From Lytechinus pictus (Eukaryota): DNA of 64,000 nucleotides. A program made the translations under genes and the position numbers. The stretch is from assembly GCF_037042905.1 (NCBI RefSeq), contig NC_087250.1:22878001-22942000 (forward strand), written 5' to 3'. Below, one piece after another: positions 31,164 through 64,000 of this stretch. Each line of letters begins with the position of its first letter. Position 1 is the stretch's first letter. The notes below the pieces were generated by a model. The model was not told where the DNA came from and did not search any database. It was given only the letters and a program-made list of their open reading frames with translations.

Positions 31164-32828
31164 ATGGCGGCAAGATTTCCTGAAGGAAACCAAGTTCAGC
31201 TCCGACCTCGAAAAGGTCATGACATGAAATGGTCATGTGACAAGCATGGTGAGCCAATCGCATTTTACTGTAAGAAACACGGATTACCCGTATGTGATCG
31301 ATGCGCTATCAAAGAACATTGCCAAAAACCATGTGAGCTAGACGATATCGAGGATGTCATCTTTGAGAGGAGAAAAAAACTGGATGAGAAACGGCCAAAA
31401 ATACAGGAACTTCAGAAACAAATGAAAGCCCTAGATTTGAAAATAAAGACAGCTTTAACTTTTGGGGATACTTATCTACAGACCATAAACAACAACATTC
31501 AAGCATCGTATCACAACAAGATCAAATCTGTTGAGGAAAAGGAGGACAGAATTATTAGGGTGATTAACGAGGAGGCAGATGAGGAAATAAGACTGGTAAA
31601 TGAGAAGAGAGAAAAACGGATCAAGGATTGCAACATTGCGAAAGAAAAGGAGCAAAAACTCATCAAAGATAAAGAAACAAAACTTCTATCAGATGCAAAA
31701 ACAATCAGCGAAATTGTTTCTAAGAAGATCAAAGAGTTAACTAATAAGAGTCAGCATGTCATAAACACTATCAAGAATATTGAATCAACCATCACACGTA
31801 TAAACCAACATGATGAAACATTGGTGAATGAAGCTCCTCAAGTACTTGCATCTATCGATGAAAATTTAAGTTTGAATGTTCATCAAGATGTGAGCGACGG
31901 TCTTGACCGAATAGAGAATGCAATCCAGAGAGTGACATTTGTAGAGGGGGAAGTAGGTGGAAAATACTACTGTAGAATTGATGGGTATATCGGTAAATGG
32001 GAACTTATCAAGTCAATCCGCATTCCATCGGTTATTCATAAGCCATATGCGCATGATCTGGTCAGTGAGGATGAGATATATGTGCTAGAAATAGATGACT
32101 ATGACATGTACACTAACAATTATGTTACAAACATTAACACTCAGCACACAGAGAAAGTCATTGATGAAGGTGAGTGGATTACATCATGTGCGTCCATAGA
32201 CAGTAACGTAATAGTACGTGGTAAGTGGATAAATAGTCGCACTGATATGTTGGATGGATGTATCACTCTCTATGACAGACAATCGAAGATGATTAGACAC
32301 ATCAGCATACCAAGGAATGAAGTTGGTGTTCCTTGTGTTCTTGTTGATGTTGACAGGGATGGGATGATCCTCGCTGCTCAGAACTATCAGTCTAATATCT
32401 ACGTCATCAATCCTGCTAATGATAAGATAGTAAACACTATTACAATGCAGGGTAAGGTGGTGATGGGTGAGATACAAGCCTTGTCATCAGGTGATATCGT
32501 TGTGAGAACAGGTAATGATGAATACACTGTCATCTCACGATCAGGAGAAGAGAAGGCTGTCATACACTGTGATGAGTGGGACTCAACACAGTGTCGCGTT
32601 GAAAAACTGACAGACACACTCTACATCACGTACTGGGATGGAGCGCGCAATACATACACAGTTGATCAGGTGTCACCTGATTGTATCATCCAGGCAAGGA
32701 GGATCGTGGAATACAAGGAATCAGATCGCTCTGACTGGGTTAGCCCTTGTCTTGTTACTACTTCTGGTAACCTCATAGTATGTGATGGATACAAACTTCA
32801 TCTTTACAAGAAGACATTCGTCATGTAA
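31164..32828 (+). CDS. RING-less TRIM-like protein copy 1 (B-box2, coiled coil, NHL-like beta-propeller), 554 aa, single coding exon
   Basis: B-box CDKH-x7-CKKH-x4-CDRC-x4-H. About 200 aa of K/E-rich helical region follows. The C-terminal ~275 aa are beta-strand repeats (VDVDRDGMI, IQALSSGDIVV, CLVT.SGNL). A splice acceptor lies 44 nt upstream of the ATG, with an in-frame TAA in between. Confidence 0.88.
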   Translation: MAARFPEGNQVQLRPRKGHDMKWSCDKHGEPIAFYCKKHGLPVCDRCAIKEHCQKPCELDDIEDVIFERRKKLDEKRPKIQELQKQMKALDLKIKTALTFGDTYLQTINNNIQASYHNKIKSVEEKEDRIIRVINEEADEEIRLVNEKREKRIKDCNIAKEKEQKLIKDKETKLLSDAKTISEIVSKKIKELTNKSQHVINTIKNIESTITRINQHDETLVNEAPQVLASIDENLSLNVHQDVSDGLDRIENAIQRVTFVEGEVGGKYYCRIDGYIGKWELIKSIRIPSVIHKPYAHDLVSEDEIYVLEIDDYDMYTNNYVTNINTQHTEKVIDEGEWITSCASIDSNVIVRGKWINSRTDMLDGCITLYDRQSKMIRHISIPRNEVGVPCVLVDVDRDGMILAAQNYQSNIYVINPANDKIVNTITMQGKVVMGEIQALSSGDIVVRTGNDEYTVISRSGEEKAVIHCDEWDSTQCRVEKLTDTLYITYWDGARNTYTVDQVSPDCIIQARRIVEYKESDRSDWVSPCLVTTSGNLIVCDGYKLHLYKKTFVM

Positions 32829-33130
32829 ATCATCAAGAATATAAACATAGTCTGCAGGCACAGACCCTGATTGAAACTTTGATCAACAAGTGTGTCTCCA
32901 CACAAAGACTAGCACATACAAAACTTCACTTCTGAATGAGAGGCCCTTCAGTATACAAGGTATAACCCTGCACATTCAGAACGTTAACTCGAGTGAAGGG
33001 TTTGCACAGCAATCTAAATGAGTGATAATGTTTTTTTAAGAACATTTCAGAGCAATGTTTTGCTACATTTCCATTTGTGTTCAACTTCAATCTGCCACCC
33101 CTTATACCCATTGGGGCAGTTTCATAATTT

Positions 33131-33515
33131 GTTATAGTAACAATCAATAGTTAAAAGCTACTGAAATAATTTGATTTGATTGGATCATAGTAACCTTTGG
33201 ATAGAAATTTTTATTTTAACAAGTCTTTATGTAACATGACTCGTTATAGTAACAATCAATAGTTAAAAGCTACTGAAATAATTCAATTTGATTGGATCAT
33301 AGTAACCTTTGGATAGGAATTGTTATTATGACAAGTCTTTATGAAACATAACTCATTATAGTAACAACAAATAGCTAAAAAATACTGAAATAATTCAATT
33401 TGATTGGATCATAGTAACCTTTGGATAGAAATCATTATAACGAGTCCTTATAAAACAATATAGTAACAATTAATAGTTAAAAGCTACTGAAATAAATTTG
33501 ATTGGATTGGATCAT
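33131..33515. repeat. ~110-bp tandem repeat 3' of TRIM-like copy 1 (also 41355-41570, 51135-51675, 58215-58435)
   Basis: gttatagtaacaatcaatagttaaaagctactgaaataattcaatttgattggatcatagtaacc units; about 4, 2, 5 and 2 copies in units 1-4. Confidence 0.85.
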
Positions 33516-33519
33516 AAAA

Positions 33520-34265
33520 ACCTGATTCTCCCGAGGGGGGGGGGGGCTCAACAATTTCTGCTGCGCTATATCGGCTGCGCAAAATTTTTTGACCTCGCCG
33601 CTCAATGACTTTTTACTTTCAAGTCTCATGCAAATTTTGAGACCAAATTTGTGATACGCAATACGCAGTTACGACATTACGCAACATTTATATGTAAGTG
33701 CATGTCAGACCCAAAATTGCTCAAAAATGTGATTTCATGTACAAATCCAATGCAAATTGTGTATTTAGCCAAAATTCATAAATGTGTCATTATTTCTACT
33801 TTTACTGATTAAACTTAATTAATTTTGCCTTTTTTATGATCAGAATTAAGTCTGGAACGATTTCCATCGAAAAAACAATAACAAACAAAAAGTAAAAAAA
33901 CAAAGAAATACATAAGAAATTTAAAAAAAACAATAAAATACACAAGAAATCAGTCTTGGTACCATAATTTTTTTCATTCACAATTGTTAGGAATGCTATA
34001 AAGAATATTTTCACCAAAAAATAGCATTCTATGAGCTTTATTTAGTGAATCAGAGCAATAAGTATGATTTCATGAATAAATTAGCATAATTAATTCATAT
34101 AAAATAAAAATATATGAATTCAGTGAAATTTGCCAATGCAACTGCGTAGATTACATCATTCTCTACCATCATGCAAATTTTCGTTGCAATCGCGCAATCC
34201 GCGGCCGAGATCTCAAGGGGGGGGGGCATAATGACAAGAATCAAAATACCCCAGGAGATTTAGGG
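33520..34265. mobile_element. piggyBac-like non-autonomous element, unit-1 specific
   Basis: Right end CCCAGGAGATTTAGGG|TTAA, degenerate left end cctgattctcccgagg; absent from other units. Confidence 0.6.
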
Positions 34266-34779
34266 TTAAAAGAAATTGTTATTATAACAAGTTTGTATGT
34301 AACAGAACCATGGAGACATTCATGTTTGATACAATGGTCATGCCTATGTGTTATTAAATTCAATGATTGTAATGTTGTATTTGAAAGATTATTATTTGTA
34401 AGTTAACAGTCAAATGCTCTTGTGGTCATATTATGCTGTTAATAGTCACAGTCATTCTTTATTATAAAATGACATCAGTTGAAATTTGAATCTTCTTTCT
34501 TTCAAGTCCCCTCTCCATGTTTTAACAATAAAATCATTCATATTTTGACCAATCAAACTTTGACAGAATATGATTTTAAGAAATCATTACGCATTTGACG
34601 GTTAAAGAGTTCAAATTTTCATTTTAACCAAATTTAACTGATATTATCATACCACATCCTTCCAACAGTTTATAATGCCCTAACCAAACAGATAACTCAT
34701 TTTAAGAATTCAAAATTCATACTATTAAATTGAAATACATTTAGCTTCATTTTGTATATAAATCTGTCAACAGGTTCGT

Positions 34780-34812
<33 letters not shown>

Positions 34813-35964
34813 CATCTAAATATTTTTTTGCAAGCATACATGTCATTGCTTACCTTAAAATAATGTTTCAATAATTCATGCTGTTTATTTTCCCCAGTTT
34901 TTTGTTTCATCATATCTTTCACCTCTGTAAGGTAAGACGCTTTCCAAGATTATTTTTATAAAACCAGTTTATATATAGGAAATCCTATGTAAAAAGTGCA
35001 CATTTCTTATATGATATAAAGTGTAGTATTATAGTATACATTATGATATTAGATCAACTATTTGGATTAATACATGTACCATAGAAGTTTAGTAGAAAGT
35101 AGAATTCAAGTCTTACAAATGATGGTATATTCTCTTGTAAAATGTTTTCATTAAATTTAGTATGGGAATTGTAGCACTTGATGTAACTGAAAGAATTGTA
35201 ACATATGAATTAGAGGCTTTTTAGAGCAAACATTTTTGTTTGTAAATCAAGAGGAAAGAAATAGATATCTTCATGTTGGAATAAAATGAAAAAATGGTGA
35301 TTATCTCATTTGGGTTAGTTAATACATGTATGTACGATAGAAGTTTAGTAGAAAGTAGAATTCAAGTCTTACAAATGATGTTATATTCTCTTGTAATATG
35401 TTTTCATTAAATTTAGTATGGGAATTGTAGCATTTGGTGTAACATAGTAAATTGATATGGTTCTTTACACCTTCAGAAGCATGGAAAGAATTTTAAGCTA
35501 TGAATCAGAGCAAATATTTTTGTTTGTAAATCAAGAGGAAAGAAATAGATATCTTTATGCTGGATTAAAACGAAAAAATGGTGATAGCCAAGAAAGACGA
35601 GACTGATTCAATAATGGATTTATAAGACGAGAAAAATAGATGTCATTCAACTACCAGTTGTATGCACATTATGTATCAACATCAATCAATCATTTTGAAT
35701 AAATGTTGTAAATGATCAAAGTCGTTCATTATGGTTGCATGTGAAATTTGTAGGAATTTCAATCAAAAGATCATTATGGTAATAGGGAGAGACAGTTTTT
35801 AATTTCTCTACAAGGAATATTAATCTGATGTATAATCAAGTAATTTTGTCAGCCTAAATGCTATTCAAATGAGAAACCTAAACATATAAAATATATAATT
35901 GTTTCATCTGCAGTTCTTTTGTTGACTCTACAATCTATGAAGGGCTGGTTAAAAATGACAGAAT

Positions 35965-36670
35965 GATGCTGAGAGATAGAAGAGAAGATGAAGAGAGAGG
36001 GAGAGAGAAAGAAAGAGGGAAAAAGAGTGAGAAAGAGTTAGTGATAAATGGATAGAGAAAGACAGGAGGAAGAAAGAGAGCACTTGGGAGAATAAGGATG
36101 ATGAGTGTCTCCACACAAAGACTAGCACATACAAAACTTGCTGTTTCAATTCCAGAGCGAGAGGGCCTTCAGTACACAATGCATGAGAAGGCTGCATACA
36201 CAAAGAGAGAGAGAGAGAGTTTGTGATAAATGGATAGAGAAAGACAGGAGGAAGAAAGAGAGTGGGAGAATAAGGATAATGTTGAGACGAAAAAAGACAA
36301 GATGAAGAGAACAAGAAAGACGGGAAAAGAGATAGAGAAAGGTAGTGATAAATGGATAGAGAAAGACAGGAGGAAGAAAGGAAGAAAGAGAGTGGGAGAA
36401 TAAGGATAATGTTGAGACAAAAAAAGACAGGATGAAGAGAAAAAGAAAGACGGAAAAAGAGATAGAGAAAGGTAGTGATAAAATGGATGGAGAAAGACAG
36501 GAGGAAGAAAGAGTGGGAGAATAAGGATGATGTTGAGAGACAAAAAAAAATAAGATGAAGAGAGAAATGGAGATGGAAAGATAAAGAGTAAAACACGAGA
36601 AGCAAGTGGCATTAAGATATAGAAAAAGCATAAAGATAAGGGGATAAAGAAGTTAGAAAGAAGAGAAGAA
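35965..36670. repeat. GA-rich polypurine tract at unit end (also ~43550-44598, ~53470-53809, ~59795-60366)
   Basis: Degenerate tandem of gataaatggatagagaaagacaggaggaagaaagagagtgggagaataaggat plus (GA)n. Confidence 0.88.
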
Positions 36671-36942
36671 ATTGAACTGATTGTGCACTTAAAATTAATA
36701 TCAACACCTAATTCACTTGACTGAATGTTTCTTTACTTTCCAGCCAACTAAAGCCAACATTGCTTCTATATGTCAGGGGTGTGAGAGTTCAGATTATTAG
36801 CTGATTTCAGAGTTTTTTGTTTTGATTTTCAGCTTAATTTCAGCTTATTTATTGCTCTTCTCTGTGCAAAAGGTATGGGGGCTCTTTCAATTTCAGACTT
36901 TTTCAATACTCAGCTTTTTTCAGATCTTTTTATCTGTGTCCA

Positions 36943-37185
36943 CACTCTAAATTACAGGGATTTAAAATTAGTCCACATGGACTGTAGTTAGGGACCAATC
37001 GAATTCCGGATTTAATTGAATCCTTCAGATTCCTTTTTTAAATCTCGAAAGATTTAAATTTAATTTAAATTTAAATCATTTGAGATTTAAATTTAAGTCT
37101 TTAGGATTAAAACAAAATCCAGAAATCGATTGGTCCCTAACTACAATCCATCTAGACTTATTTTAAATCCCTGTAATTTAGAGTG
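36943..37185. mobile_element. Palindromic MITE with CACTCT...AGAGTG ends
   Basis: TIR CACTCTAAATTACAGGGATTTAAAAT; empty site at ~54078. Confidence 0.82.
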
Positions 37186-37508
37186 CGCACTCACACTTCT
37201 GATATGCAGACAAGACATGCCAGTGGGCGTTCCTCTTTATCATAACATAATTATTTTTCTAGGCTGTTTATTTTGTTCATATCGGATCATATCAGTTCAT
37301 GCCATGGCAAATTCATTTATCTGTGACTATTACAACTTTTGATCTTTCATATCTAATATCATAGATAATACAAACATTGTAAAACAGAGATAAGAAATTC
37401 AAGAGGGGGCCATATATATATACATAAGGGTTAGTCATACATTATGAAATAGCTATCTTGTTGATTTATTACTATCACATAGTGAATCTAGACCAGGGGC
37501 CCAACTAA

Positions 37509-39409: not shown

Positions 39410-41068
39410 ATGGCGGCAAGATTTCCTGAAGGAAACCAAGTTCAGCTCCGACCTCGAAAAGGTCATGACATGAAATGGTCATGTGACAAGCATGGTGAGC
39501 CAATCGCATTTTACTGTAAGAAACACGGACTACCCGTATGTGATCGATGCGCTATCAAAGAACATTGCCAAAAACCATGTGAGCTAGACGATATCGAGGA
39601 TGTCATCTTTGAGAGGAGAAAAAAACTGGATGAGAAACGGCCAAAAATACAGGAACTTCAGAAACAAATGAAAGCCGTAAATTTAAAAATAAAGACAGCT
39701 TTAGCTTTCAGTGATACTAATCTACAGACAATAAACAACAACATTCAAGCATCGTATCACAACGAGATCAAATCTGTTAAGGAAAAGGAGGACAGAATGA
39801 TTAGGGTGATTAACGAGGAGGCAGATGAGGAAATAAGACTCGTTAATGAGAAGAGAGAAAAACGGATCAAGGACTGCCACATCGAGATAGAAAAGGAGCA
39901 AAAAATCATTAAAGACAAAGAAGCAAAACTTCTATCAGATGCAAAAACAATCACCAAAATCGTTTCTAAGAAGATCAAAGATCTAACTATTAAGAGTCAG
40001 CATGTCATAAACACTATTAAGAATATTGAATCCAACATCACACGTATAAACCAACATGATGAAACATTGGTGAATGAAGCTCCTCAAGTACTTGCATCTA
40101 TTGATGAAAATCTAAGTTTGAATGTTCATCAAAATGTGAGCGACTGTCTTGACCGAATAGAGAGTGAAGTTGAGAGAGTGAAGTTTGTAGAGGGGGAAGC
40201 AGGTGGAGAATACTATAGTAGAATTGATGGGTATATCGGTAAATGGGAACTTGCCAGGTCAATCCACATTCCATCGGTTGTTAATAAGCCGTGCGTGTGT
40301 AGTTTGTTCAGTGAGGATGAGATATGTGTGCAAGACAGAGGTAACAATGACATGTATGTTACAAACATTAACACTCAACACACAGAGAAAGTCATTGATG
40401 AAGGTGTGTTGATTACATCATGTGCGCCCATAGACAGTAACGTAATAGTATGTGGTAAGGATAGCGATGATTGCATGGGTGACAGGTTGGATGGATGCAT
40501 CACTCTCTATGACAGACAATGGAAGGTGATTAGAGACATCACCATACCAAGGAATGAAGACGGTTTAAGTGTGTATGTGTATGTTGATGTTGACAGGGAT
40601 GGGATGATCATCGCTGCTCAGGACGATCAGTCTAATATCTACGTTATCAATCCTGCTAATGATAAGATAGTAAACACTATTACGATGCAGGGTAAGGAGG
40701 TGTGGGATGGGATACAAGCCTTGTCATCAGGTGATATCGTTGTGACGACAGATGATAATGAATACACTGTCATCTCACGATCAGGAGAAGAGAAGGCTGT
40801 CATACACTGTGATGAGTGGGGTCTGTCAGAGTGTCGCGTTGACAAACTGACAGACACACTCTACATCGCGTATTGGGATAGAGAGCGTAATACCTACGCA
40901 GTTGATCAGGTGTCACGTGATGGTATCATCCAGGCAAGGAGGATCATGGAATATGTGGAATCAGATCGCCATAGCTTCATTAGCCCTTGTCTTGTTACTC
41001 CTTCTGGTAACCTCGTAGGATGTGATGGAGACAAACTTCATCTTTACAAGAAGACATTCGTCTTGTAA
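39410..41068 (+). CDS. RING-less TRIM-like protein copy 2, 552 aa
   Basis: Paralog of copy 1. Start placed at the shared MAARFPEG ATG. The ORF-track extension from 39242 crosses a polypyrimidine/cag acceptor at 39364. Confidence 0.88.
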   Translation: MAARFPEGNQVQLRPRKGHDMKWSCDKHGEPIAFYCKKHGLPVCDRCAIKEHCQKPCELDDIEDVIFERRKKLDEKRPKIQELQKQMKAVNLKIKTALAFSDTNLQTINNNIQASYHNEIKSVKEKEDRMIRVINEEADEEIRLVNEKREKRIKDCHIEIEKEQKIIKDKEAKLLSDAKTITKIVSKKIKDLTIKSQHVINTIKNIESNITRINQHDETLVNEAPQVLASIDENLSLNVHQNVSDCLDRIESEVERVKFVEGEAGGEYYSRIDGYIGKWELARSIHIPSVVNKPCVCSLFSEDEICVQDRGNNDMYVTNINTQHTEKVIDEGVLITSCAPIDSNVIVCGKDSDDCMGDRLDGCITLYDRQWKVIRDITIPRNEDGLSVYVYVDVDRDGMIIAAQDDQSNIYVINPANDKIVNTITMQGKEVWDGIQALSSGDIVVTTDDNEYTVISRSGEEKAVIHCDEWGLSECRVDKLTDTLYIAYWDRERNTYAVDQVSRDGIIQARRIMEYVESDRHSFISPCLVTPSGNLVGCDGDKLHLYKKTFVL

Positions 41069-48334: not shown

Positions 48335-50816
48335 ATGGCGGCAAGATTTCCTGAAGGAAACCAAGTTCAGCTCCGACCTCGAAAAGGTCATGACATGACA
48401 TGGTCATGTGACAAGCATGGTGAGCCAATCGCATTTTACTGTAAGAAACACGGACTACCCGTATGTGATCGTTGCGCTATCAAAGAACATTGCCAAAAAC
48501 CATGTGAGCTAGACGATATCGAGGATGTCATCTTTGAGAGGAGAAAAAAACTGGATGAGAAACGACCAAAAATACAGGAACTTCAGAAAGAAATGAAAGC
48601 CGTAGATTTAAAAATAAAGACAGCTTTAGCTTTCAGTGATACTAATCTACAGACCATAAACAACAACATTCAAGCATCGTATCACAACAAGATCAAATCT
48701 GTTAAGGAAAAGGAGGACAGAATGATTAGGGTGATTAACGAGGAGGCAGATGAGGAAATAAGACTGGTAAATGAGAAGAGAGAAAAACGGATCAAGGATT
48801 GCAACAATGAGAAAGAAAAGGAGCAAAAACTCATCAAAGATAAAGAAACAAAACTTCTATCAGATGCAAAAACAATCAGCGAAATTGTTTCTAAGAAGAT
48901 CAAAGATCTAACTATTAAGAGTCAGCATGTCATAAACACTATTAAGAATATTGAATCCACCATCACACGTATAAACCAACATGATGAAACATTGGTGAAT
49001 GAAGCTCCTCAAGTACTTGCATCTATTGATGAAAATTTAAGTTTGAATGTTCATCAAGATGTCAGCGATTGTCTTGACCGAATAGAGAGTGAAGTTGAGA
49101 GAGTGAAGTTTGTAGAGGGGCAAGTAGGTGGAAAATACTATGATAGAATTGATGGGTATATTGGTAAATGGGAACTTGTCAAGTCAATCCACATTCCATC
49201 GGTAGTTAATGAGCCTTTTGTGTGTGGTCTGGTCAGTGAGGATGAGATATGTGTGCTAGACGATAACAATGCCATGTATGTTACAAACATCAACACTCAA
49301 CACACAGAGAAAGTCATTGATGTGGGTGTGTGGATTACATCATGTGTGCCCATAGACAGTAACGTAATAGTATGTGGTAAGTTGAGATGGGATTGCACCT
49401 GTGACAGGTTGGATGGATTCATCACTCTCTATGACAGACAATGGAAGGTGATTAGAGACATCAACATACCAAGGAATGGAGTTGGTTTTCGTGTGTTTCA
49501 TATCGAAAACTTGTATGCAGTGTACCGGACATGTAAAAACATAGCAGACGACGTTTGCAGACCTCGCGATCATCGTATGACTAGTGGTGCGGAATGTTCC
49601 ATTGCGGCTTTATGGGGGAAATAGCATTACAGAGGGATAAAATGTATACACAGATAATGTTTCAGCGTTGATTCGCAATATTTTGAGTCAATTTTCATAA
49701 ATTATCGTTGTTTGAACATTTAAACATCATTATAAAATGAAAGAAATAAGCAAAACTTAATTTTCAGACTTAGCTATGCAGTGGTAAGCTAGAATGCACC
49801 CCTCGTATACATAATGGACCCGTCACGAGTGTAGGTTTGCTCTTCGGACATCACTATCACAAAGAAAATCTCCTCTGATTTGATGATAAAAGTGCCCTAT
49901 TTCCTTATTAACCAATCTCCATGGTTCTTTCATGAGTATTTGCCTTACAATGTGCCCTTTATTGTAATCTAGGCGGAAATTCATGATACCACCACCTACC
50001 GATGTGACGACGGATATAATCCACCCGGGTACTATAAAAATGTCCCCCAAACCCATTATCCAATACATATTCCTGACTATGGATGGTTTCTAGTGATTTT
50101 AATGTAATAAAGTGCCATATTTCCCACCAATTGAATGTAAAAAAAATTATGGTCATCTGATAGAAGAAGTTGTTACCATTCATTTCAGGGGGGCGGAAAT
50201 TCTATCTGAATCAACGCTTGTCCTTGATACACATTTGTTTGTGAAAAAATGGTATAATGCAAATGAATTCTGCGTGTTATAAGGGTGCGCGCGTGCAGCG
50301 AGGACCTTCTGTCCGCTAGTTTTCCATATGGTGTATGTTGACAGGGATGGGATGATCATTGCTGCTCAGTCCTATCAGTCTAATATTTACGTCATCAATC
50401 CTGCTGATGGTAAGATAGTAAACACTATTACGATGCAGGGTAAGAAGGTGTGGGGTGAGATACAAGCCTTGTCATCGGGTGATATCGTTGTGAAGACAGG
50501 TTATGATAAATACACTGTTATCTCACGATCAGGAGAAGAGAAGGCTGTCATACACTGTGATGAGTGGGGATCGTCATGGTGTCGCGTTGACAAACTGACA
50601 GACACACTCTACATCGCGTACAGGGATAGAACACGTAGTACCTACGCAGTTGATCAGGTGTCACGTGATGGTATCATCCAGGCAAGGAGGATCATGGAAT
50701 ACGTGCAATCAAAGCGCTCTCCAATCACAGGCCCTTGTCTCGTTACTCCTTCTGGTAACCTTGTAGGATGTGATGGAGACAAATTTCATCTTTACAAGAA
50801 GACATTCATCTTGTAA
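48335..50816 (+). pseudogene. RING-less TRIM-like copy 3, interrupted by an ~830-bp insertion (49499-50330); both halves otherwise intact
   Basis: ORF 48335 matches the paralogs up to PRNGVGFRVF, then diverges. ORF 50328-50816 resumes at VYVDRDGMII. Removing the insert restores one frame with no other stop or frameshift. Confidence 0.82.
49499..50330. mobile_element. TIR-bearing insertion disrupting TRIM-like copy 3
   Basis: CATATCGAAAACTTG vs reverse complement of the right end CATATGGAAAACTAG (13/15); absent from paralogs; TSD ambiguous. Confidence 0.85.
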
Positions 50817-54382: not shown

Positions 54383-54733
54383 TACCCCTTTCATAAACCC
54401 AATTATGCGGCTAATAGCAGCATAATGTGGTCGTAAAATCAGAGGAGGACCAGAGTTATCCACATTATGAATAATAGCAGCATCGGGACAAGATTTTGAG
54501 TTTATGAACGCATTTCCAAATAATGCGGATAATTGCCATGGTGCGGTCACCCTTTTCCAACACAACCGCATCGGAGGGGGCGTGTCCAGTTGTCATGACC
54601 ATTATCCGCCTTTTTCAGGACGGGCGCTCGTAAAAATAATGCAGATCATTTTCAATTTGTGAAAGCAATTTTTATTGAATTATCCGCATTACTTTTAGGC
54701 GGCTAATTGGAGGATAGGTTTATGAAAGGGGTA
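54383..54733. mobile_element. Harbinger-like MITE at the paralogous site of 37509-37887
   Basis: Same TIR, TAA TSD and flanks. Confidence 0.88.
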
Positions 54734-56238: not shown

Positions 56239-57906
56239 ATGGCGGCGAGATTTCCTGAAGGAAACCAAGTTCAGCTCCGACCTCGAAAAGGTCATGACAT
56301 GACATGGTCATGTGACAAGCATGGTGAGCCAATCGCATTTTACTGTAAGAAACACGGACTACCCGTATGTGATCGTTGCGCTATCAAAGAACATTGCCAA
56401 AAACCATGTGAGCTAGACGATATTGAGGATGTCATCTTTGAGAGGAGAAAAAAACTGGATGAGAAACGGCCAAAAATACAGGAACTTCAGAAACAAATGA
56501 AAGCCCTAGATTTGAAAATAAAGATGGCTTTAACTTCTGGCGATACCAATCTGCAGACAGTAAACAACAGCATTCAAGCATCGTATCACAACAAGATCAA
56601 ATCTGTTGAAGAAAAGGAGGACAGAATGATCAGGGTGATTAATGAGGAGGCAGATGAGGAAATAAGACTAGTAAATGAGAAGAGAGAAAAACGAATCAAA
56701 GATTGCAACACCGAGAGAGAAAAAAAACGACAAATCATCAAAGACAAAGAAGCAAAACTTCTATCAGATGCAAAGAAAATCACCGAAATCATTTCTAAGA
56801 AGATCAAAGATCTAACTAATAAGAGTCAGCATGTAATAAACACTATCAAGAATATTGAATCAACCATCACACGTATCAACCAACATGATGAAACATTGGT
56901 GAATGAAGCTCCTCAAGTACTTGCATCTATCGATGAAAATTTAAGTTTGAATGTTCATCAAGATGTGAGCGACGGTCTTGACCGAATAGAGAATGCAATC
57001 CAGAGAGTGACATTTGTAGAGGGGGAAGTAGGTGGAAAATACTACTGTAGAATTGATGGGTATATCGGTAAATGGGAACTTGTCAAGTCAATCCACATTC
57101 CATCGGTTGTTCATAAGCCGTATGTGTGTGGTTTAGTCAGTGATGATGAGATATGCGTACAAGACAGATATAACAATGACATGTACATGTATGTTACAAA
57201 CATCAACACTCAACACACAGAGAAAGTCATTAGAGGTGTGTGGATTATATCATGTGCGCCCATAGACAGTAACGTAATAGTATGTGGTAAGAGGAGAGAT
57301 CATTTCACGGGTGACAGGTTGGATGGATGCATCACTCTCTATGACAGACAATGGAAGGTGATTAGAGACATCAGCATACCAAGGAATGGAGACTCCAGAT
57401 ATTGTAGTGTGTATGTTGATGTCGACAGCAATGGGATGATCATTGCTGGTCAGTACTATCAGTCTAATATCTACCTCATCAATCCTGCTGATGATAAGAT
57501 AGTAAACACTATTACAATGCAGGGTAAGAAGGTGCGTGGTGAGATACAAGCCTTGTCATCAGATGATATCGTTGTGAAGACAGGTTATTATGAATACACT
57601 GTCATCTCACGATCAGGAGAAGAGAAGGCTGTCATACACTGTGTTAAAAGGGGTAGATCGCAGTGTCGCGTTGACAAACTGACAGACACACTCTACATCG
57701 CGTACTGGGATAGAGTGCGTATGACCTACGCAGTTGATCAGGTGTCACGTGATGGTATCATCCAGGCAAGGAGGATTGTGGAATACGTGAAATCAGATCG
57801 CCCTCACTACAGCAGCCCTTGTCTTGTTACTCCTTCTGGTAACCTTGTAGTACATGTATGTGATGGAGACAAATTTCTTCTTTACAAGAAGACAATCCTC
57901 TTGTAA
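56239..57906 (+). CDS. RING-less TRIM-like protein copy 4, 555 aa
   Basis: Paralog with an intact ORF from the shared MAARFPEG ATG; acceptor at 56193. Confidence 0.88.
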   Translation: MAARFPEGNQVQLRPRKGHDMTWSCDKHGEPIAFYCKKHGLPVCDRCAIKEHCQKPCELDDIEDVIFERRKKLDEKRPKIQELQKQMKALDLKIKMALTSGDTNLQTVNNSIQASYHNKIKSVEEKEDRMIRVINEEADEEIRLVNEKREKRIKDCNTEREKKRQIIKDKEAKLLSDAKKITEIISKKIKDLTNKSQHVINTIKNIESTITRINQHDETLVNEAPQVLASIDENLSLNVHQDVSDGLDRIENAIQRVTFVEGEVGGKYYCRIDGYIGKWELVKSIHIPSVVHKPYVCGLVSDDEICVQDRYNNDMYMYVTNINTQHTEKVIRGVWIISCAPIDSNVIVCGKRRDHFTGDRLDGCITLYDRQWKVIRDISIPRNGDSRYCSVYVDVDSNGMIIAGQYYQSNIYLINPADDKIVNTITMQGKKVRGEIQALSSDDIVVKTGYYEYTVISRSGEEKAVIHCVKRGRSQCRVDKLTDTLYIAYWDRVRMTYAVDQVSRDGIIQARRIVEYVKSDRPHYSSPCLVTPSGNLVVHVCDGDKFLLYKKTILL

Positions 57907-60840
57907 ATCATCAAGAATCTAAACGTAGTCTACAGACCCTGATTGAAACTTTGATCAACAAGTTTGCCTCCACACAAAGAATATCACATGTATACAAATC
58001 TTGCTGTTTCAATTCCTGAGCGAGAGCGCCTTCAGTACACAAGGTATAACCCTGCACATTCAGACCGTTAACTCGAGTGAAGGGTTTGCACAGCAATCTA
58101 AATGAGTGATAATGTTTTTTTAAGAACATTTCAGAGCAATGTTTTGCTACATTTCCATTTGTGTTTAACTTCAATCTGCCACCCCTTATACCCATTGGGG
58201 CAGTTTCATAATTTGTTATAGTAACAATCAATAGCTAAAAAATACTGAAATAATTCAATTTGATTGGATCATAGTAACCTTTGGATAGAAATTTTTATTT
58301 TAACAAGTCTTTATGAAACATGACTCGTTATAGTAACAATCAATAACTAAAAAATACTGAAATAATTCAATTTGATTGGATCATAAAAACCTTTGGATAG
58401 AAATTGGTATTATATTATAACAAGTCTTTACATAACAGGACCATGGACTATGTGTTATTATATTCAATGTAATGTTGTATTTAAAAGATTATTATTTGTA
58501 AGTTAACAGTCCAATGCTCTTGTGGTCATATTATGCTGTTAATAGTCACAGTCATTCTTTATTATAAAATGACATCAGTTGAACTTTGAATCTTCTTTCT
58601 TTCAAGTCCCCTCTCCATGTTTTGACGATAAAATCATTCATATTTTGACCAATTAAACTTTGACAGAATATGATATTAAAAATCATAAAGAGTTCGAATT
58701 TTCATTTTAACTGAATTTAAATGATATTATCATCCCACATTCCTCCGAAAGTTTACAATGCCCTAACCAAACAGATTACTCATTTCAAGAATTAAAAATT
58801 CATACTATTAAATTGAAATATATTTAGCTTTGTTTTGTATATAAATCTGTCAGTAGGTTCGTCATTGTATATATATATATCACATTTTAAATATTTTTTT
58901 TTGCACGCATACATGCATATCCTCGTCATTGCTTACCTTAAAATAATGTTTCAATAATTTATCCTGTTTATTTTCCCAAGCTTTTTGTTTGATCATATCT
59001 TTCACCTCTGTATTAAAGAAGCTTTCCAATCTTATCTTTATAAAACCAATTCATATATAGTATATCCAATTTTGTAAAAAGTGCAAATTTCTTTTATTAT
59101 ATAAAGTGCAGTATACATGTATAATGATATGATATTTAAAGATCATCTATTTGGGTTAATACATGTACGATAAAAGTTTAGTAGAAATTAGAATTTGAGT
59201 CTTACAAATGATGTTATATTCTTTTGTAACATGTTTTCATTAAATTTAGTCTAGGAATTTTAGACCTTGATGTAAGATAGTAAAATGATATGGTTGTATT
59301 TGATCTTTACACCTTCAGGAGGATTGACAGAATTGTAACATATGAATCAGAGCAAACATTGTTTAGTGTAAATCAAGAGGAAAGAAATAGATATCTTTAT
59401 ACTGGAATAAAATGGTGATAGCCAAGAAAGACAAGAAAGATTCAATCATGTATATAAAATATGCGAAAGATTGGTCAATCAACTACCAGTTGTAAACACA
59501 TTACTGATCTAAATCTATCAATCATTTTGAATAAATGTTGTAAATGATCAAAATCGTTCATTATGGTTGCATGTGAAATTTGTAGGAATTTCAATCAAAA
59601 GATCATTATGGTGATAGGGAGAGACAGTTTTTAAATTCTCTACAAGGAATATTAATCTGATCTATAATCAAGTAATTTTGTCAGCCTAAGTGCTATTCAA
59701 ATGAGAAACCTAAACATATAAAATATATAATTGTTTCATCTGCAGTTCTTTTGTTGACTCTACAATCTATGAAGGGCTGGTTAAAAATGACAGAATGATG
59801 CTGAGAGATAGAAGAGAAGATGAAGAGAGAGGGAGAGAGAAAGAAAGAGGGGAAAAGAGAGAGAAAGAGTTAGTGATAAATGGATAGAGAAAGACAGAAG
59901 GAAATAGAGTGAGAGAATAAGGATGATGAGTGTCTCCGCACAAAGACAAGCACACTTACAAAACTTGCTGTTTCAATTCCTGAGCGAGAGGGCCTTCAGT
60001 ACACAAGGTATGAGAAGGCTGCACACACAAAGAGAGAGAGAGAGAGAGTTTGTGATAAATGGATAGAGAAAGACGGGAGGAAGAAAGAGAGTGGGAGAAT
60101 AAGGATAATGTTGAGACAAAAAAAGACAGGATGAAGAGAAAAAGAAAGACAGAGAAAGAGATAGAGAAAGGTAGTGATAAAATGGATGGAGAAAGACAGG
60201 AGGAAGAAAGAGTGGGAGAATAAGGATGATGTTGAGAGAAAAAAAAAATAAGATGAAGAGAGATGGAGAGGGAAAGAGAAAGAGTAAAACTCAAGAAGGG
60301 GAATTAAGACATAGAAAAAACATAAAGATAAGGGGATAAAGAAGTTAGAGAAAAAGAAGAGAAGAAATTGAACTGATTGTACACTAAAAATTAATATCAA
60401 CGCCTTATTCACTTGACTGAATGTTTGTTTACTTTCAAGCATCACTAAGCCAACATTGATTCTATATGTAGACAAGACATGCCAGTGGGCGTTCCTCTTT
60501 ATTAATATAACATAATAATTATTTTTCAAGGCTGTTCATTTTTTTTCATATCGGATCATATCAGTTCATGCCATGGTAATTTCATTTACCTGTGACTATT
60601 ACAACTTTTGATCTTTCATATCTAACATCATAGATAATACAAACATTGTAAAACAGAGATAAGTAATTCAAGAGGGGACCATATATATACATAAGGGTTG
60701 GTCATACATTATGAAATAGCTATCTTGTTGATTTATTACTATCATATAGTGAATCTAGACCAGGGGCCCAACTAAGACACCTTGATGTGGGGGGGGGGGG
60801 GTCAGATCAATGACTTAAATCTCACATCACTCTCTACTGA

Positions 60841-61393
60841 TACCCTTTTTACACAGGATTTTCTTAGCCCCGGACTATCGCTAACCCCGTACTATCCTTA
60901 ACCCCGTACTATTTTTTTTCCTTTTTACACATGCCAAATTGTTATTGCTAACCCCGGATAAGGAATGCTTGCTTTTCACACACGAAACTCGCTAACCCCG
61001 GACTAGTGGTTTTTGTTGATCATTCGTAGTACAAGTACTTCACTCGTACCTTTTTACACACGCTACAATTTCCTTAACCCCGTACTATAGGTGGGGCCAA
61101 ATTGCCATTTAGCCCCACCTATAGTACGGGGTTAAGCTTAGCCCACTTTCGTTTTACACTAGCGATCTTAACCCCGTACTATCGCTCTTAGCACCGCAAT
61201 TGCTGGGATAACCCTGCTTTTTTGCAGGGCCAAATAATCCCGTACTAAAGGTGGGGTTAGCCCACTTTGCAAAAATGCTGTGTAAAAAGAAAGTGGGCTA
61301 AGCTTAACCCCGTACTATAGGTGGGGCTAAATGGCAATTTAGCCCCACCTATAGTACGGGGTTAAGGAAATTTTAGCGTGTGTAAAAAGGGTA
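60841..61393. mobile_element. Harbinger-like MITE rich in aaccccgtactat palindromic subrepeats
   Basis: TGA|TACCCTTTTTACACA...TGTGTAAAAAGGGTA|TCA; empty site ctacTGAgtgac at ~45068. Confidence 0.85.
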
Positions 61394-62697
61394 TCAGTGA
61401 CATAACCTAAGCAAATCATTACTCTTTCTTTACTTAATCTTTATTTCATCTTCTTAATTCCTCTTCCTCCTTTCTTTTCCTGAATTTTTCCCTACCTAAA
61501 ATCACAAGAATATACAGATAGAAGTTGGATGAGATTTGCAAAACATGTCTTAAGAATGCCATCAGTATATGCTCAATTGAAACAGCAATGATTTGGCAAC
61601 CAAATGGAAGAAGGAACATTGGCTGTCCCAAGCACACCTGGCGGACTTTCCTGAAAGACTTAGAGTTGGCCTATAACCTTGATAACAGTCTACTTAAATT
61701 TAGTGGTTGCAAAACTCAAAAGTGACGACAGCTTCCTGCCTAATGAACTACACAGGAAGAAGCCTCCCCCGGTCTAAAGTATCACTATTCATAACAGTGG
61801 TATAACTCATGTCCTGATATGAATGATATTTGCTCATCAATATTACATCACATATTAATATTGCTCTGATCAGATAACAACTGCTGCAGATGCTGTTAAA
61901 ATATTCAGATACAGCCATATTCTGGTACTGACAAATTGTGCTCTAACTCTGCAGTTTTTCATTTGAAGTCCAGATTGCTTTACAACTCAGATTTCAAATG
62001 ATTGTGAACAGGTAATGTAACTTGCATAACTTCAACTAATCTATCTTAAAGAAATAATCTGTAATTATAAGGGGATGGGGGAAATGATTACGATATGCTG
62101 AAACCATGGACCTATGAAGAGATGGACATTCATCAATATTATGAATTCTTCAACAGGTGACTGTTATTGTCATCTGAATAACATTCTCTTCATATTAGTC
62201 TACTTTGGTTCTATGATCGTCACCGTGAGAAGGGCCGGAAGCAATTCGTGATTGGACATTTATATTCAACAGATTGTATGCGCAGTAGATAACAAATCCC
62301 TGAAATCATGGAAAATTGATGTGCAGTTCTTGTTTACCTTAATTTGGCAATCTTAGTTCCATGTGTTTTATGTGGGGAATTGTCTGCATATTTTGATATA
62401 TTGGCAATTTTGTGATTGTTTAAGACTTTTCCCAAGTTTCTCCACTATAATATTCCAGATATACATGTACATGTACGTGGCACATAACTTGTATAGATCT
62501 TATATCTCTCAATGTCATTGAGGTCCTTATGTGTATGCGGAAGTGAGCGGATTAAATGATATCATATTCTATATCACAGAAATCATCTGCTTCCCAAGTT
62601 TGCTGCTCCAAATATGAAGCATGTTGATTAAAAGGCATATGGCGTAACTGGGAATCACCCAACAAAAATCAAGACCAGGGAAACCGTTCCTTCCTAA

Positions 62698-63092
62698 AGC
62701 TAAATGACAATAGTTGCAGTAAAATACTGATTTCGTGAGAAAGTCTGTAAAACCAAGGTTAAGTATTACTATATCATCGTGGATCTAGATCTGGTATAGT
62801 TACACAAACTGAACTTTGTGAAATCATAATATCTAAGCTAAAAAACGATCACACTGAAGATCGCCAACACAGATAGGCACACGTGGGACAGTGTATTATT
62901 ATTGCTGGAATAAAGACCCGACGGAAGTGACAGAATCCGCGCTTATTTTGCTTATTTCTCAGCAATTACACAATTTCTTCCAGAATCCTTTGGCACATAT
63001 TTTTTATTCATACAAACATACACTTTAGTGATCATTATATTAAATTCTGTAAAAAGTCATTTTGAGATCGTCCCCACAACTGGAATTTACCT
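62698..63092. mobile_element. Kolobok-like element (family of 52798)
   Basis: AGCTAAATGACAAT...ACTGGAATTTACCT|TTAA; empty ttcTTAAagtgatcag at ~47940. Confidence 0.78.
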
Positions 63093-63096
63093 TTAA

Positions 63097-63508
63097 AGGC
63101 GACCGCACACCTTACGATTGGTCTGCGACCCGATTTCAGAATAAATTGTAGTAGAATTTGATGCTAACATTGAGACTTGGAATATCCTACTGTGTAATGT
63201 TCTAAATCATCGTAAGAATACCTATATTCAAGTCTGTAACTATACTATCATCCTTCTTAGAATAAAAGCGAATTTAGTATCTAGTCGTAATGACGTCATA
63301 GCAGTCGTACGATTGGCTACGATTTGAAACAAATTTGGCCTTTACTCCGAAATAAAGGCTTACAATATATCAAAATGGTTATATTAGCATTCTTTTAATT
63401 AACTTAAACATCAAATAAAATGATATGTTCCATTCACATTTTCAGAAAATGAGCAAAATGCGATTTGTTCCAAAATCGGATCGCGAACAGTCGTAAGGTG
63501 TTAAGCCT
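63097..63508. mobile_element. Second TIR element abutting the previous one at the same TTAA site
   Basis: AGGC...ACACCTTACGA / TCGTAAGGTGT...GCCT inverted ends. Confidence 0.7.
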
Positions 63509-63896
63509 TAAATTGATCAGAAACGCCTTGATGATTATGTTATTGCTATTGCTACAACACCTGTATGTTCTCATTAAGATGCACATAACCAGGTGACGGT
63601 GACTATCATTGGATCAAAGAAATGCTCACGTTTATTGTCCATCTCTTAGGTCCATGCATGATGAAACCCAATGTACATTTGCTGAAGAAGATTTTTTTTT
63701 ATTATTGAGTTTAGCTTTTGCATTAATGTTGACATATGAGAAGGTCCATGGGTAAGGTCTACATAACTTTTTTTCCACCATATAGCTGATTTTAATCCCA
63801 TTTATTTTTTAAGCTTCTTCCTGCTTCTTATCCATCTCACATTCCTTACAGGTTTCCTCTATCATCCAGAGCTAAACAATCTTCAGACATTACATC

Positions 63897-64000
63897 ATGG
63901 CGGCAAGATTTCCTGAAGGAAACCAAGTTCAGCTCCGACCTCGAAAAGGTCATGACATGACATGGTCATGTGACAAGCATGGTGAGCCAATCGCATTTTA
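63897..64000 (+). CDS. RING-less TRIM-like protein copy 5 (5' end, cut by window edge)
   Basis: MAARFPEGNQVQLRPRKGHDMTWSCDKHGEPIAF..., with a leader matching that of copy 3. Confidence 0.85.
   Translation, partial: MAARFPEGNQVQLRPRKGHDMTWSCDKHGEPIAF

What the first reader, a model, noticed from the sequence alone, without database searches (positions are those of the whole stretch)
31164..64000. Tandem array of RING-less B-box/coiled-coil/beta-propeller genes with an invariant N-terminus and hypervariable propeller loops: candidate diversified cytosolic receptor family
Seen: residues 1-89 differ at only 2 positions across the four complete copies (K/T22, Q/E86). The propeller alternates near-identical scaffold with short, highly variable patches (copies 1/2/3/4): GK-WINSRT/DSDDCMG/LRWDCTC/RRDHFTG; PRN-EVGVPC/EDGLSVY/GVGFRV/GDSRYCS; Q-NY/DD/SY/YY; GK-VVMGE/EVWDG/KVWGE/KVRGE; RTGNDE/TTDDNE/KTGYDK/KTGYYE; HC-DEWDSTQ/DEWGLSE/DEWGSSW/VKRGRSQ; R-SDWVS/HSFIS/SPITG/PHYSS. 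Several patches have in-frame indels. They recur about twice per ~40-aa blade and are rich in Y, W, R, D and S. Known: NHL-type propellers bind ligands on the top face, and TRIM5 PRYSPRY variable loops evolve under viral pressure. Inference: all patches map to one face and form a paratope-like surface under diversifying selection. No signal peptide or TM segment is visible, so this would be an intracellular pathogen- or nucleic-acid-recognition repertoire.
Basis: partly seen in the sequence, partly recalled or inferred. Interest (0 to 1): 0.9.

Follow-up and report, generated by a model that had tools for sequence, protein, structure and literature searches.

The report
Sea urchin hypervariable-propeller TRIM-like array
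A sea urchin (Lytechinus pictus) chromosome carries a tandem array of intronless genes for RING-less TRIM-like proteins whose propeller has one face evolving under strong diversifying selection, which is the pattern of a recognition-receptor repertoire, but no transcription was detected and no ligand is known.

Summary
The window has four same-strand copies, spaced 7.9-8.9 kb apart, of a ~553-aa single-exon gene. Three are intact. Copy 3 is split by a young 832-bp transposon. A fifth copy starts at 63897, and the array runs to at least seven copies. The genome is Lytechinus pictus, with at least 79 family matches.

The protein has a TRIM-type B-box, a predicted antiparallel coiled-coil dimer, and a six-bladed propeller closest to TRIM-NHL domains (Z 20-22.5). 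None of 85 members has a Pfam RING or NHL hit.

The variable patches fall in the B-C and D-A loops, which form the top, ligand-binding face.
- **Top loops:** pairwise dN/dS is 2.1-2.3.
- **Other parts:** strands 0.85, bottom loops 0.7, B-box and coiled coil 0.2-0.4.
- **Site model, propeller:** 17% of sites have omega about 6 (2dlnL 408).
- **Site model, N-terminal half:** no signal.

All 20 intact paralogs have different top faces. Their net charge runs from -14 to +6, which argues against a generic RNA-binding role. Recombination and gene conversion are pervasive.

Three same-species RNA-seq runs gave zero depth on copy 1 and on the N-terminal stretch that the close paralogs nearly share. 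Expression, ligand and immune role are therefore untested. The scan noted a similar array elsewhere in this genome (s1-294496).

The parts
31164..32828 (+). Copy 1: intact single-exon CDS of 554 aa. It is the most divergent copy and is not present in the protein database.
31230..31334 (+). Copy 1 B-box (residues 23-57). The eight putative zinc ligands C25, H28, C36, H39, C44, C47, H52 and C57 are invariant in 85 family members.
   Evidence: Pfam zf-B_box; invariant columns; TRIM25/TRIM5/TRIM3 profile hits
31347..31928 (+). Copy 1 helical coiled-coil region (residues 62-255). It is predicted to form an antiparallel homodimer with its dyad near residue 142.
31992..32819 (+). Copy 1 six-bladed NHL-like beta-propeller (residues 277-552). 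The hypervariable top loops are residues 287-293, 311-315, 334-338, 356-366, 381-390, 407-410, 428-436, 451-452, 469-472, 493-496, 518-528 and 541-543.
39410..41068 (+). Copy 2: intact CDS of 552 aa, with an acidic top face (net charge -14).
48335..49498 (+). Copy 3, 5' part of the CDS (codons 1-388), ending in the D-A loop between blades 2 and 3.
49499..50330 (.). 832-bp non-autonomous element with 13-bp terminal inverted repeats that interrupts copy 3. The genome holds at least 40 copies at 98-99% identity.
50331..50816 (+). Copy 3, 3' part of the CDS. It is in the same frame as the 5' part once the element is set aside.
56239..57906 (+). Copy 4: intact CDS of 555 aa, with a basic and aromatic top face (net charge +6).
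63897..64000 (+). First 104 nt of copy 5. The rest lies outside the window (locus L005).
30359..31163 (+). About 0.8 kb upstream block conserved between the units (84-99% identity). It is the presumed promoter/5' UTR; its function was not tested.

Best explanation
The region is part of a tandem array of intronless genes in Lytechinus pictus. At least 7 copies lie here and at least 79 family matches genome-wide. They encode a sea-urchin-specific, RING-less offshoot of the TRIM-NHL architecture.

Shown or modelled:
- The protein has a B-box2-type zinc finger and a long coiled coil that is predicted to pair as an antiparallel dimer.
- The C-terminal domain is a six-bladed, NHL-type propeller.
- The B-box, the coiled coil, the propeller strands and the bottom loops are conserved by purifying selection.
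- The twelve loops that make up the top face (the face NHL domains use to bind ligands) are driven apart by positive selection and small indels. Every paralog therefore presents a different surface.
- New copies arise by unit duplication. They are reshuffled by recombination and gene conversion, and are lost, for example by transposon insertion (copy 3).

Inferred, not shown:
- The family is a germline-encoded repertoire of cytosolic recognition modules for fast-evolving protein ligands, most plausibly from pathogens or selfish elements.
- It would work like TRIM5alpha/finTRIM B30.2 loops or the WD40 sensors of fungal NLRs.
- Output would go through the invariant N-terminal B-box/coiled-coil scaffold, by assembly or by recruiting a partner, because the protein has no RING of its own.
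For: - **Array and copy number:**
- **Species and lineage-specific clades:** all Lytechinus copies form one clade (support 100) apart from S. purpuratus.
- **Domains:** the B-box is found in 85/85 members, with 0 RING and 0 Pfam NHL hits. The B-box plus coiled coil matches TRIM25 (E 8e-6), TRIM5 and TRIM3 in a profile search.
- **Models:** pLDDT 84 for the whole protein and 87 for the propeller.
- **Closest folds:** Mei-P26 NHL Z 22.5 (rmsd 3.6, 255 aligned), Brat 21.7, TRIM2 21.3, Lin41 20.8, NHL-2 20.2, TRIM71 20.0. Foldseek TM-scores are 0.66-0.68 for NHL against 0.5-0.59 for WD40.
- **Dimer of residues 1-260:** score 0.63 against a best control of 0.00. The mark was reached by 21 of 30 proteins solved as pairs of one chain and 0 of 23 solved as single chains. 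The runs agree in at least 98% of contacts and the partner pLDDT is 84. The pairing is antiparallel (142 with 142, 164 with 123, 200 with 87).
- **Site models:** propeller M2a against M1a gives 2dlnL 408, with 16.7% of sites at omega 6.2. The N-terminal half gives 2dlnL 0 and omega 0.34.
- **Allowing synonymous-rate variation:** 32 positive sites, 21 of them in top loops, 8 of the 10 strand sites nearer the top, and 1 in bottom loops.
- **Tree-free dN/dS on structure-defined regions:** top loops 2.27 over 120 pairs, 2.12 (95% 1.56-3.14) over 8 disjoint pairs, and 1.73 (1.13-3.06) for the window's own three intact copies. Strands give 0.85, bottom loops 0.73, coiled coil 0.38, B-box 0.18.
- **Diversity of the face:** all 20 top faces are distinct. 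Amino-acid identity is 0.61 in top loops against 0.85 in the rest of the propeller.
- **No signal peptide or TM segment:**
- **Recombination:** the N- and C-half trees conflict with 97-100% support. PHI gives p<0.001. The flanks of copies 2 and 4 are 95-100% identical, but their gene bodies are ~90% identical.
Against: - **No transcription detected.** Depth was zero over the copy 1 CDS in three RNA-seq runs of the same species, and no RNA run was listed as holding copy 1 or copy 4. Copy 1 is also absent from the protein database.
- **No recognisable signalling or effector domain.** There is no RING, so an output mechanism is conjecture.
- **Weak sequence-level NHL homology.** It is only sub-threshold (E 0.04-0.3).
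- **Face assignment is indirect.** I derived it from strand topology, not from coordinates.
- **Caveats on the selection tests.** Recombination inflates site-model likelihood-ratio tests. When distant pairs are included, top-loop dN/dS falls to 1.28 (1.03-1.65).
- **The dimer prediction may be recalled** from solved TRIM coiled coils.
- **No ligand, tissue or induction data exist.**
Confidence: 0.55

Rival explanations
1. The proteins are RNA-binding regulators like classical TRIM-NHL proteins (Brat, LIN-41, Mei-P26, NHL-2). On this reading the diversified top face reads different RNA motifs, for example transposon or viral RNAs, and the proteins act on RNA fate rather than on proteins.
For: The closest folds are all RNA-binding TRIM-NHL domains. 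Those domains bind RNA on the top face (PMC4015489, PMC5908797, PMC9634614). Arginine is enriched 1.95x at the selected sites.
Against: The top-loop net charge ranges from -14 to +6, and 14 of 20 paralogs are net negative. That does not fit the electropositive RNA-binding face of Brat, LIN-41 and TRIM71. W, F and Y enrichment fits protein or small-ligand contacts equally well. No Pfam NHL signature is detected.
Confidence: 0.15
2. The diversifying selection comes from a conflict that is not pathogen-driven. Candidates are reproductive proteins, meiotic-drive or toxin-antidote-like selfish systems, and recognition between individuals.
For: The genes evolve fast, are lineage-specific and sit in tandem arrays. 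They are silent in the three RNA samples examined, which fits germline- or stage-restricted expression. No immune signalling domain is present.
Against: The architecture is cytosolic, with no signal peptide or TM segment, so direct gamete-surface recognition is unlikely. The nearest functional analogues with this evolutionary pattern in the TRIM family are antiviral (PMC2657112). No linked partner gene is visible in the 8-kb units.
Confidence: 0.15
3. The array is evolutionary debris. On this reading the copies are unexpressed and decaying, and the apparent omega above 1 is produced by gene conversion, misaligned indel-rich loops and relaxed constraint.
For: No RNA depth was found. One copy is broken by a transposon, and several family members in the genome carry stops or truncations. 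Recombination is pervasive.
Against: 20 of the 30 best loci have full-length open frames. Purifying selection is strong in the same genes: B-box dN/dS is 0.18, coiled coil 0.38, and 179 of 261 N-terminal codons are under purifying selection. Relaxed constraint gives omega near 1, not 2-6. dN exceeds dS in 119 of 120 pairs on loops defined by structure rather than by variability. The same positions vary in three species.
Confidence: 0.07

Closest known systems
TRIM-NHL proteins (class VII TRIMs: Brat, Mei-P26, LIN-41/TRIM71, TRIM2, TRIM3, NHL-2)
   Same: Both have the domain order B-box, coiled coil, six-bladed propeller. The N-terminal module matches TRIM profiles. The propeller's best structural matches are these NHL domains (Z 20-22.5). 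The N- and C-terminal strands share the sixth blade, as described for TRIM2/3/71 (PMC9634614).
   Different: This family has no RING and no filamin domain, and no Pfam NHL repeat is detectable in 85 members. The classical proteins are single-copy, conserved developmental regulators. This family is intronless, arrayed in dozens of copies, and has a hypervariable top face of variable charge.
TRIM5alpha and teleost finTRIMs (B30.2/PRYSPRY-based antiviral TRIMs)
   Same: Both are lineage-specific tandem expansions with a nearly invariant N-terminal module. In both, positive selection is concentrated in the loops of the C-terminal recognition domain. finTRIM has 15.6% of sites with omega above 1 under M2a (PMC2657112), against 16.7% here.
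   Different: The recognition domain here is a propeller rather than a B30.2 beta-sandwich. The RING E3 module is absent. No virus induction, restriction activity or even expression has been shown.
Fungal NWD/HNWD (HET-E/HET-D) NLR-like proteins with hypervariable WD40 propellers
   Same: Both have a beta-propeller in which a few positions per blade, on the interaction surface, are under diversifying selection and are reshuffled by recombination among paralogs (PMC1805685, PMC2873952).
   Different: The fungal proteins have seven-bladed WD40 propellers built from highly similar repeats that exchange within a gene, joined to a NACHT NTPase and an effector domain. Here the propeller is a six-bladed NHL type with dissimilar blades, and it is joined to a B-box and coiled coil.
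Coral tachylectin-2-like propeller lectin under positive selection
   Same: It is an invertebrate beta-propeller recognition protein with high amino-acid diversity and positive selection (PMC2880987).
   Different: It is a five-bladed secreted lectin encoded by a single polymorphic locus. It is not an arrayed family of cytosolic B-box proteins.

Membership tests
TRIM / RBCC family | N-terminal RING finger | tested here: not met
   The protein starts 22 residues before the B-box. 0 of 85 members have a RING hit. The upstream in-frame extension in copies 2 and 4 is not Cys/His-rich.
TRIM / RBCC family | B-box zinc finger | tested here: met
   PF00643 hits 85/85 members. Eight Cys/His ligands are invariant. 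The profile matches B-boxes of TRIM25, TRIM5, TRIM3 and others.
TRIM / RBCC family | Coiled coil that forms an antiparallel dimer | tested here: inconclusive
   Long helices span residues 62-136 and 145-213. The predicted homodimer scores 0.63 against a best control of 0.00. The mark was reached by 21 of 30 solved one-chain pairs and 0 of 23 single chains. The contacts are antiparallel. This is a prediction and may be recalled from solved TRIM dimers.
NHL repeat propeller (Pfam PF01436; TRIM-NHL C-terminal domain) | NHL repeat sequence signature | tested here: not met
   No PF01436 hit at E<=0.01 in 85 members or at E<=1 in the window copies. Only sub-threshold profile hits to the TRIM3 and TRIM2 NHL domains were found (E 0.042-0.28).
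NHL repeat propeller (Pfam PF01436; TRIM-NHL C-terminal domain) | Six four-stranded blades, with the N- and C-terminal strands in the sixth blade | tested here: met
   This comes from the strand map of the models. Strand 277-286 closes blade 6 together with 529-552. It matches the description in PMC9634614.
NHL repeat propeller (Pfam PF01436; TRIM-NHL C-terminal domain) | Closest structural neighbours are NHL domains | tested here: met
   VIA-align ranks 1-4, 6 and 7 are TRIM-NHL domains (Z 20.0-22.5), but other six-bladed propellers follow within 1-3 Z units. Foldseek TM-scores are 0.66-0.68.
NHL repeat propeller (Pfam PF01436; TRIM-NHL C-terminal domain) | Electropositive top face that binds RNA | tested here: not met
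   Top-loop net charge is -14 to +6 and negative in most paralogs. RNA binding itself cannot be tested with these tools.
Diversified innate recognition families (TRIM5/finTRIM-like) | Lineage-specific multigene expansion | tested here: met
   There are at least 79 matches in the genome. The Lytechinus and Strongylocentrotus copies fall in separate clades.
Diversified innate recognition families (TRIM5/finTRIM-like) | Positive selection focused on the ligand-binding surface | tested here: met
Diversified innate recognition families (TRIM5/finTRIM-like) | Expressed in immune cells or induced by infection | tested here: inconclusive
   Depth was zero on copy 1 in three RNA-seq runs of unknown tissue, with ~6% of each run sampled. 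No RNA holder was listed.
Diversified innate recognition families (TRIM5/finTRIM-like) | Binds a pathogen-derived ligand and restricts infection | not testable with these tools
   This needs experiments.

The most novel reading that the evidence does not exclude
Echinoids carry a previously undescribed germline repertoire of intracellular receptors. These would be RING-less TRIM-like dimers whose NHL-type propeller top face acts as a paratope-like surface. The surface would be diversified by positive selection and shuffled among arrayed paralogs by gene conversion. The family would then be a third structural solution for intracellular non-self recognition, beside B30.2-based TRIMs and the LRR or WD40 sensors of NLRs, and would add to the known TLR, NLR and SRCR expansions of sea urchins.
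Probability: 0.3. Interest if true: 0.8.

Novelty: new variant of a known kind. Interest (0 to 1): 0.62.

Why it matters
Sea urchins are a reference case for greatly expanded innate receptor families, but the well-known expansions are of TLR, NLR and SRCR genes.

A large, arrayed, intronless B-box/coiled-coil/propeller family with a selectively diversified binding face would add a new class of candidate intracellular sensors. It would also show that the NHL propeller, known as a conserved RNA-binding module of developmental regulators, can be re-used as a hypervariable recognition surface.

The family gives a tractable system of many paralogs on one scaffold with twelve defined loops. It could be used to ask how propeller surfaces encode specificity and how gene conversion and selection together build repertoires. 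I found nothing describing this family in the searchable literature. One recent paper notes only that ~140 genes are annotated as TRIM in S. purpuratus and that some are induced in coelomocytes (PMC13043383).

Tried and rejected
- **RNA evidence.** Two run searches listed no RNA holder. Run X1 is labelled 'RNA?' but covers coding and intergenic DNA alike at ~20-30x, so it is probably DNA.
- **Logan contig for P0101.** It is 2004 nt. I could not classify it as RNA or DNA, so I did not use it.
- **Literature.** Searches for gene identifiers of S. purpuratus relatives, in full texts and in the supplements of PMC13043383, found nothing.
- **Pfam on the propeller.** It gave only chance-level hits (Glyco_hydro_125, DUF5074, Beta-prop_ACSF4), which I rejected.
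- **WD40 as closest fold.** Foldseek ranks WD40 first by E-value. I rejected this because TM-scores and Z-scores favour six-bladed NHL domains and the strand count gives six blades.
- **Copy 3 insertion as an intron.** I rejected this because it is a high-copy terminal-inverted-repeat element.
- **PHI test within the propeller alone.** It was not significant (p=0.13), because incompatibility is near saturation at all distances (0.39 against 0.40). It neither shows nor excludes short-tract exchange there.
- **First 31 kb of the window.** It holds no long ORF and gave no context.
- **PAML and HyPhy.** They were not available, so I wrote my own GY94-type M0/M1a/M2a and FUBAR-like grid code with fixed, scaled nucleotide-tree branch lengths.

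Full report
**What is in the sequence**

The window is G000:C6:22878001-22942000. The genome is Lytechinus pictus: many paralogs are identical to proteins named for that species.

Four direct repeats of a ~1.66-kb open frame lie on the + strand at 31164, 39410, 48335 and 56239, spaced 8246, 8925 and 7904 bp apart. A fifth copy begins at 63897. Further copies follow outside the window, giving at least 7 in this array.

The genome gives at least 79 matches. They include a large second cluster at C6:27.0-27.95 Mb, smaller ones on C16, C8 and C9, and a distant (~33% identical) subfamily on C13 and at C6:1.2-1.8 Mb. Almost all match as one uninterrupted frame, so the genes are intronless in the coding part.

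**Check of the observation**

An alignment of the window's copies confirms that residues 1-89 differ only at K/T22 and Q/E86. The propeller region alternates near-identical stretches with short patches that differ in nearly every residue and carry in-frame indels.

Copy 3 is not complete. An 832-bp element (49499-50330) with 13-bp terminal inverted repeats sits in codon 388/389. It has at least 40 copies at 98-99% identity across the genome. The two coding parts are in the same frame once the element is set aside. The gene was therefore probably intact until a recent insertion.

**Architecture**

- **Pfam.** It detects only a B-box. The hit is found in 85/85 family members, and none has a RING or NHL hit.
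- **Zinc ligands.** Eight Cys/His residues are invariant.
- **TRIM relationship.** A family profile matches the B-box plus coiled coil of TRIM25 (E 8e-6), TRIM5 and TRIM3. The propeller gives only sub-threshold hits, but all of them are to NHL domains of TRIM3 and TRIM2.
- **Whole-protein model.** AlphaFold2 with an 85-sequence alignment gives pLDDT 84. It shows the B-box, helices 62-136, 145-213 and 217-255, then a beta domain.
- **Propeller model.** A separate model of the beta domain has pLDDT 87 and pTM 0.85.
- **Closest solved folds.** These are Mei-P26 (Z 22.5, rmsd 3.6, 255 aligned), Brat (21.7), TRIM2 (21.3), Lin41 (20.8), NHL-2 (20.2) and TRIM71 (20.0). Other six-bladed propellers and WD40 follow at Z 18-20. 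Foldseek TM-scores agree: 0.66-0.68 for NHL against 0.5-0.59 for WD40.
- **AlphaFold DB clusters.** Whole-length matches are found to B-box proteins of bivalves, amphioxus, corals and brachiopods annotated as TRIM2-, TRIM71- or nhl-1-like.
- **Dimer.** Residues 1-260 are predicted to form an antiparallel homodimer. The score is 0.63 against a best control of 0.00. The mark was reached by 21 of 30 proteins solved as one-chain pairs and 0 of 23 solved as single chains. The runs agree in at least 98% of contacts and the partner pLDDT is 84. This could be recalled from solved TRIM coiled coils.
- **Localisation signals.** There is no signal peptide or TM segment. The maximum 19-residue hydropathy is 1.25 and the N-terminus is hydrophilic.

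**Blade map and the face question**

I read the strands of the models against the repeated sequence pattern (A strand, conserved xDG or SGD turn, B strand, variable turn, C strand, conserved turn, D strand, variable loop). This gives six blades: 294-333, 339-380, 391-427, 437-468, 473-517, and 529-552 closed by strand 277-286.

This matches the published NHL topology, in which both termini belong to the sixth blade (PMC9634614). That paper places the C-terminus of TRIM2 on the bottom surface and ligand binding at the top opening.

In our protein the last strand runs from the B-C turn (541-543) to the C-terminus. The B-C loops, and by alternation the D-A loops, therefore lie on the top face. 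This is an inference from topology. I had no access to model coordinates.

**Selection**

I took 20 intact paralogs from the genome, built a codon alignment, and split it at residue 257 with separate trees.

- **Site models.** My own GY94-type models gave omega 0.34 for the N-terminal half, with M2a no better than M1a. For the propeller, M0 omega was 0.99, and M2a put 16.7% of sites at omega 6.2 (2dlnL 408).
- **FUBAR-like grid allowing synonymous-rate variation.** The propeller part has 32 positive sites. 21 of them fall in the 92 top-loop columns, 10 in the 165 strand columns (8 of those nearer the top), and 1 in the 50 bottom-loop columns (Fisher p=3e-6). In the N-terminal half, 179 of 261 codons are under purifying selection.
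- **Tree-free tests.** Recombination invalidates a single tree, so I also used Nei-Gojobori estimates on regions defined by the structure, not by variability. The results are in the table below.

| Region | 120 pairs of 16 close paralogs | 8 disjoint pairs |
|---|---|---|
| Top loops | 2.27 (dN>dS in 119/120) | 2.12 (95% 1.56-3.14) |
| Strands | 0.85 | 0.89 |
| Bottom loops | 0.73 | 0.71 |
| Coiled coil | 0.38 | 0.36 (with B-box) |
| B-box | 0.18 | (pooled with coiled coil) |

The window's own three intact copies give a top-loop dN/dS of 1.73 (1.13-3.06). With two distant pairs added it is 1.28 (1.03-1.65).

The same positions are the unresolved ones in the consensus of 85 proteins from three species.

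**Nature of the variable surface**

- All 20 paralogs have a different top face. Amino-acid identity is 0.61 in top loops against 0.85 in the rest of the propeller.
- The selected sites are enriched in W, F, R, Y and H, not in S or D.
- Top-loop net charge runs from -14 (copy 2) to +6 (copy 4), while the bottom loops stay at -2 to -6. This confirms the scan's separate note on opposite charge in copies 2 and 4. It also argues against a common nucleic-acid ligand.

**How the array evolves**

- **Mosaic divergence.** The flanks of copies 2 and 4 are 95-100% identical over several kb. From about +55 to at least +2184 (the CDS plus ~0.5 kb of 3' flank) they are only ~90% identical, at synonymous sites too. 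Gene bodies have therefore been exchanged after a two-gene unit duplication.
- **Conflicting trees.** L009 pairs with L013 in the N half (100%) but with L017 in the C half (97%). L016, a member of this array, carries an N-terminal half of a different subclade.
- **PHI test.** It is significant for the whole gene and for the N half (p<0.001). Within the propeller, incompatibility is near saturation (0.39) and independent of distance (p=0.13).
- **Across species.** All Lytechinus copies form one clade apart from S. purpuratus (support 100). Within the array's clade, the L. variegatus copies group apart from those of L. pictus. I used all 85 rows of A2 plus the 20 genomic paralogs. A2 itself left out fragments and fusion models.

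This is birth-and-death evolution with concerted evolution of the scaffold.

**Expression**

No RNA run was listed as holding copy 1 or copy 4. I laid three ribo-depleted RNA-seq runs of the same species label on 29600-35599, reading ~6% of each (8-9 million records). Depth was zero across the copy 1 CDS. That includes the first ~650 nt, which are at least 95% identical to the neighbouring copies and would have collected their reads.

The depth in the flanks comes from dispersed repeats. The tissue or stage is unknown to me. Copy 1 is also absent from the protein database, while copies 2 and 4 and two later copies are present. Expression is therefore an open question, and it is the main weakness of any functional claim.

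**Interpretation**

The structural and evolutionary description is well supported: a RING-less TRIM-NHL-like dimer with one face under diversifying selection, encoded by a recombining tandem array.

The claim that the family is a repertoire of cytosolic recognition modules for fast-evolving ligands rests on analogy. The analogues are TRIM5alpha and finTRIM (PMC2657112), the WD40 sensors of fungal NLRs (PMC1805685, PMC2873952) and other selected propeller lectins (PMC2880987). I put this reading at about one half, and an immune role specifically at about one third.

The rivals are RNA recognition, non-immune conflicts and decaying genes. They are listed with their evidence in the rival explanations.

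I found no description of this family in the literature I could search. The nearest is a remark that S. purpuratus has ~140 genes annotated as TRIM, some of them induced in coelomocytes (PMC13043383). The scan's first stage noted a similar array on another piece of this genome (s1-294496). That note has not been followed up.

Noticed in passing
window 49499-50330: A young non-autonomous DNA element of 832 bp with 13-bp imperfect terminal inverted repeats. The genome holds at least 40 copies at 98-99% identity (161 first-look candidates), so the family was probably active recently.
   Followed up: partly
window 35949-36631, 44186-44761, 53332-53751, 59956-60529: Each repeat unit carries a 0.4-0.7 kb purine/pyrimidine-rich low-complexity tract. 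It shows up as long S/L/F-rich ORFs on the minus strand and as a GC-skew peak. It matches the scan's note on polypurine tracts near duplication breakpoints. I did not test the breakpoint claim.
   Followed up: no
window 36900-39400 and 53700-56200 (upstream of copies 2 and 4); 42700-45100 and 59500-61900 (downstream): The flanks of copies 2 and 4 are 95-100% identical, while their gene bodies plus ~0.5 kb of 3' flank are only ~90% identical, at synonymous sites too. This is a mosaic that a simple duplication does not explain. Gene-body exchange with other paralogs is the likely cause.
   Followed up: partly
window 31164-32828: Copy 1 has an intact frame, but it is absent from the 5.8-billion-protein collection, whereas copies 2 and 4 and two later copies are present. 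It is also the most divergent copy. It may be unannotated or silent.
   Followed up: partly
proteins P0002, P0007, P0008, P0009 (L. pictus, another annotation): These L. pictus proteins belong to the array's clade but are only 86-91% identical to any copy in this assembly. That suggests large haplotype or copy-content differences between individuals.
   Followed up: no
window 29800-30400, 30600-30800, 32800-33000, 33600-34400: RNA-seq reads pile up on short stretches flanking copy 1. However, 82-87% of the laid reads run on into unlike sequence, so these are transcribed dispersed repeats rather than transcripts of this locus.
   Followed up: partly
G000:C13:6.27-6.74 Mb and G000:C6:1.24-1.78 Mb: A distant subfamily (~32-36% identical, ~605 aa, same single-frame layout) forms its own large tandem clusters. 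Its sequences form a separate clade containing both L. pictus and L. variegatus proteins.
   Followed up: no
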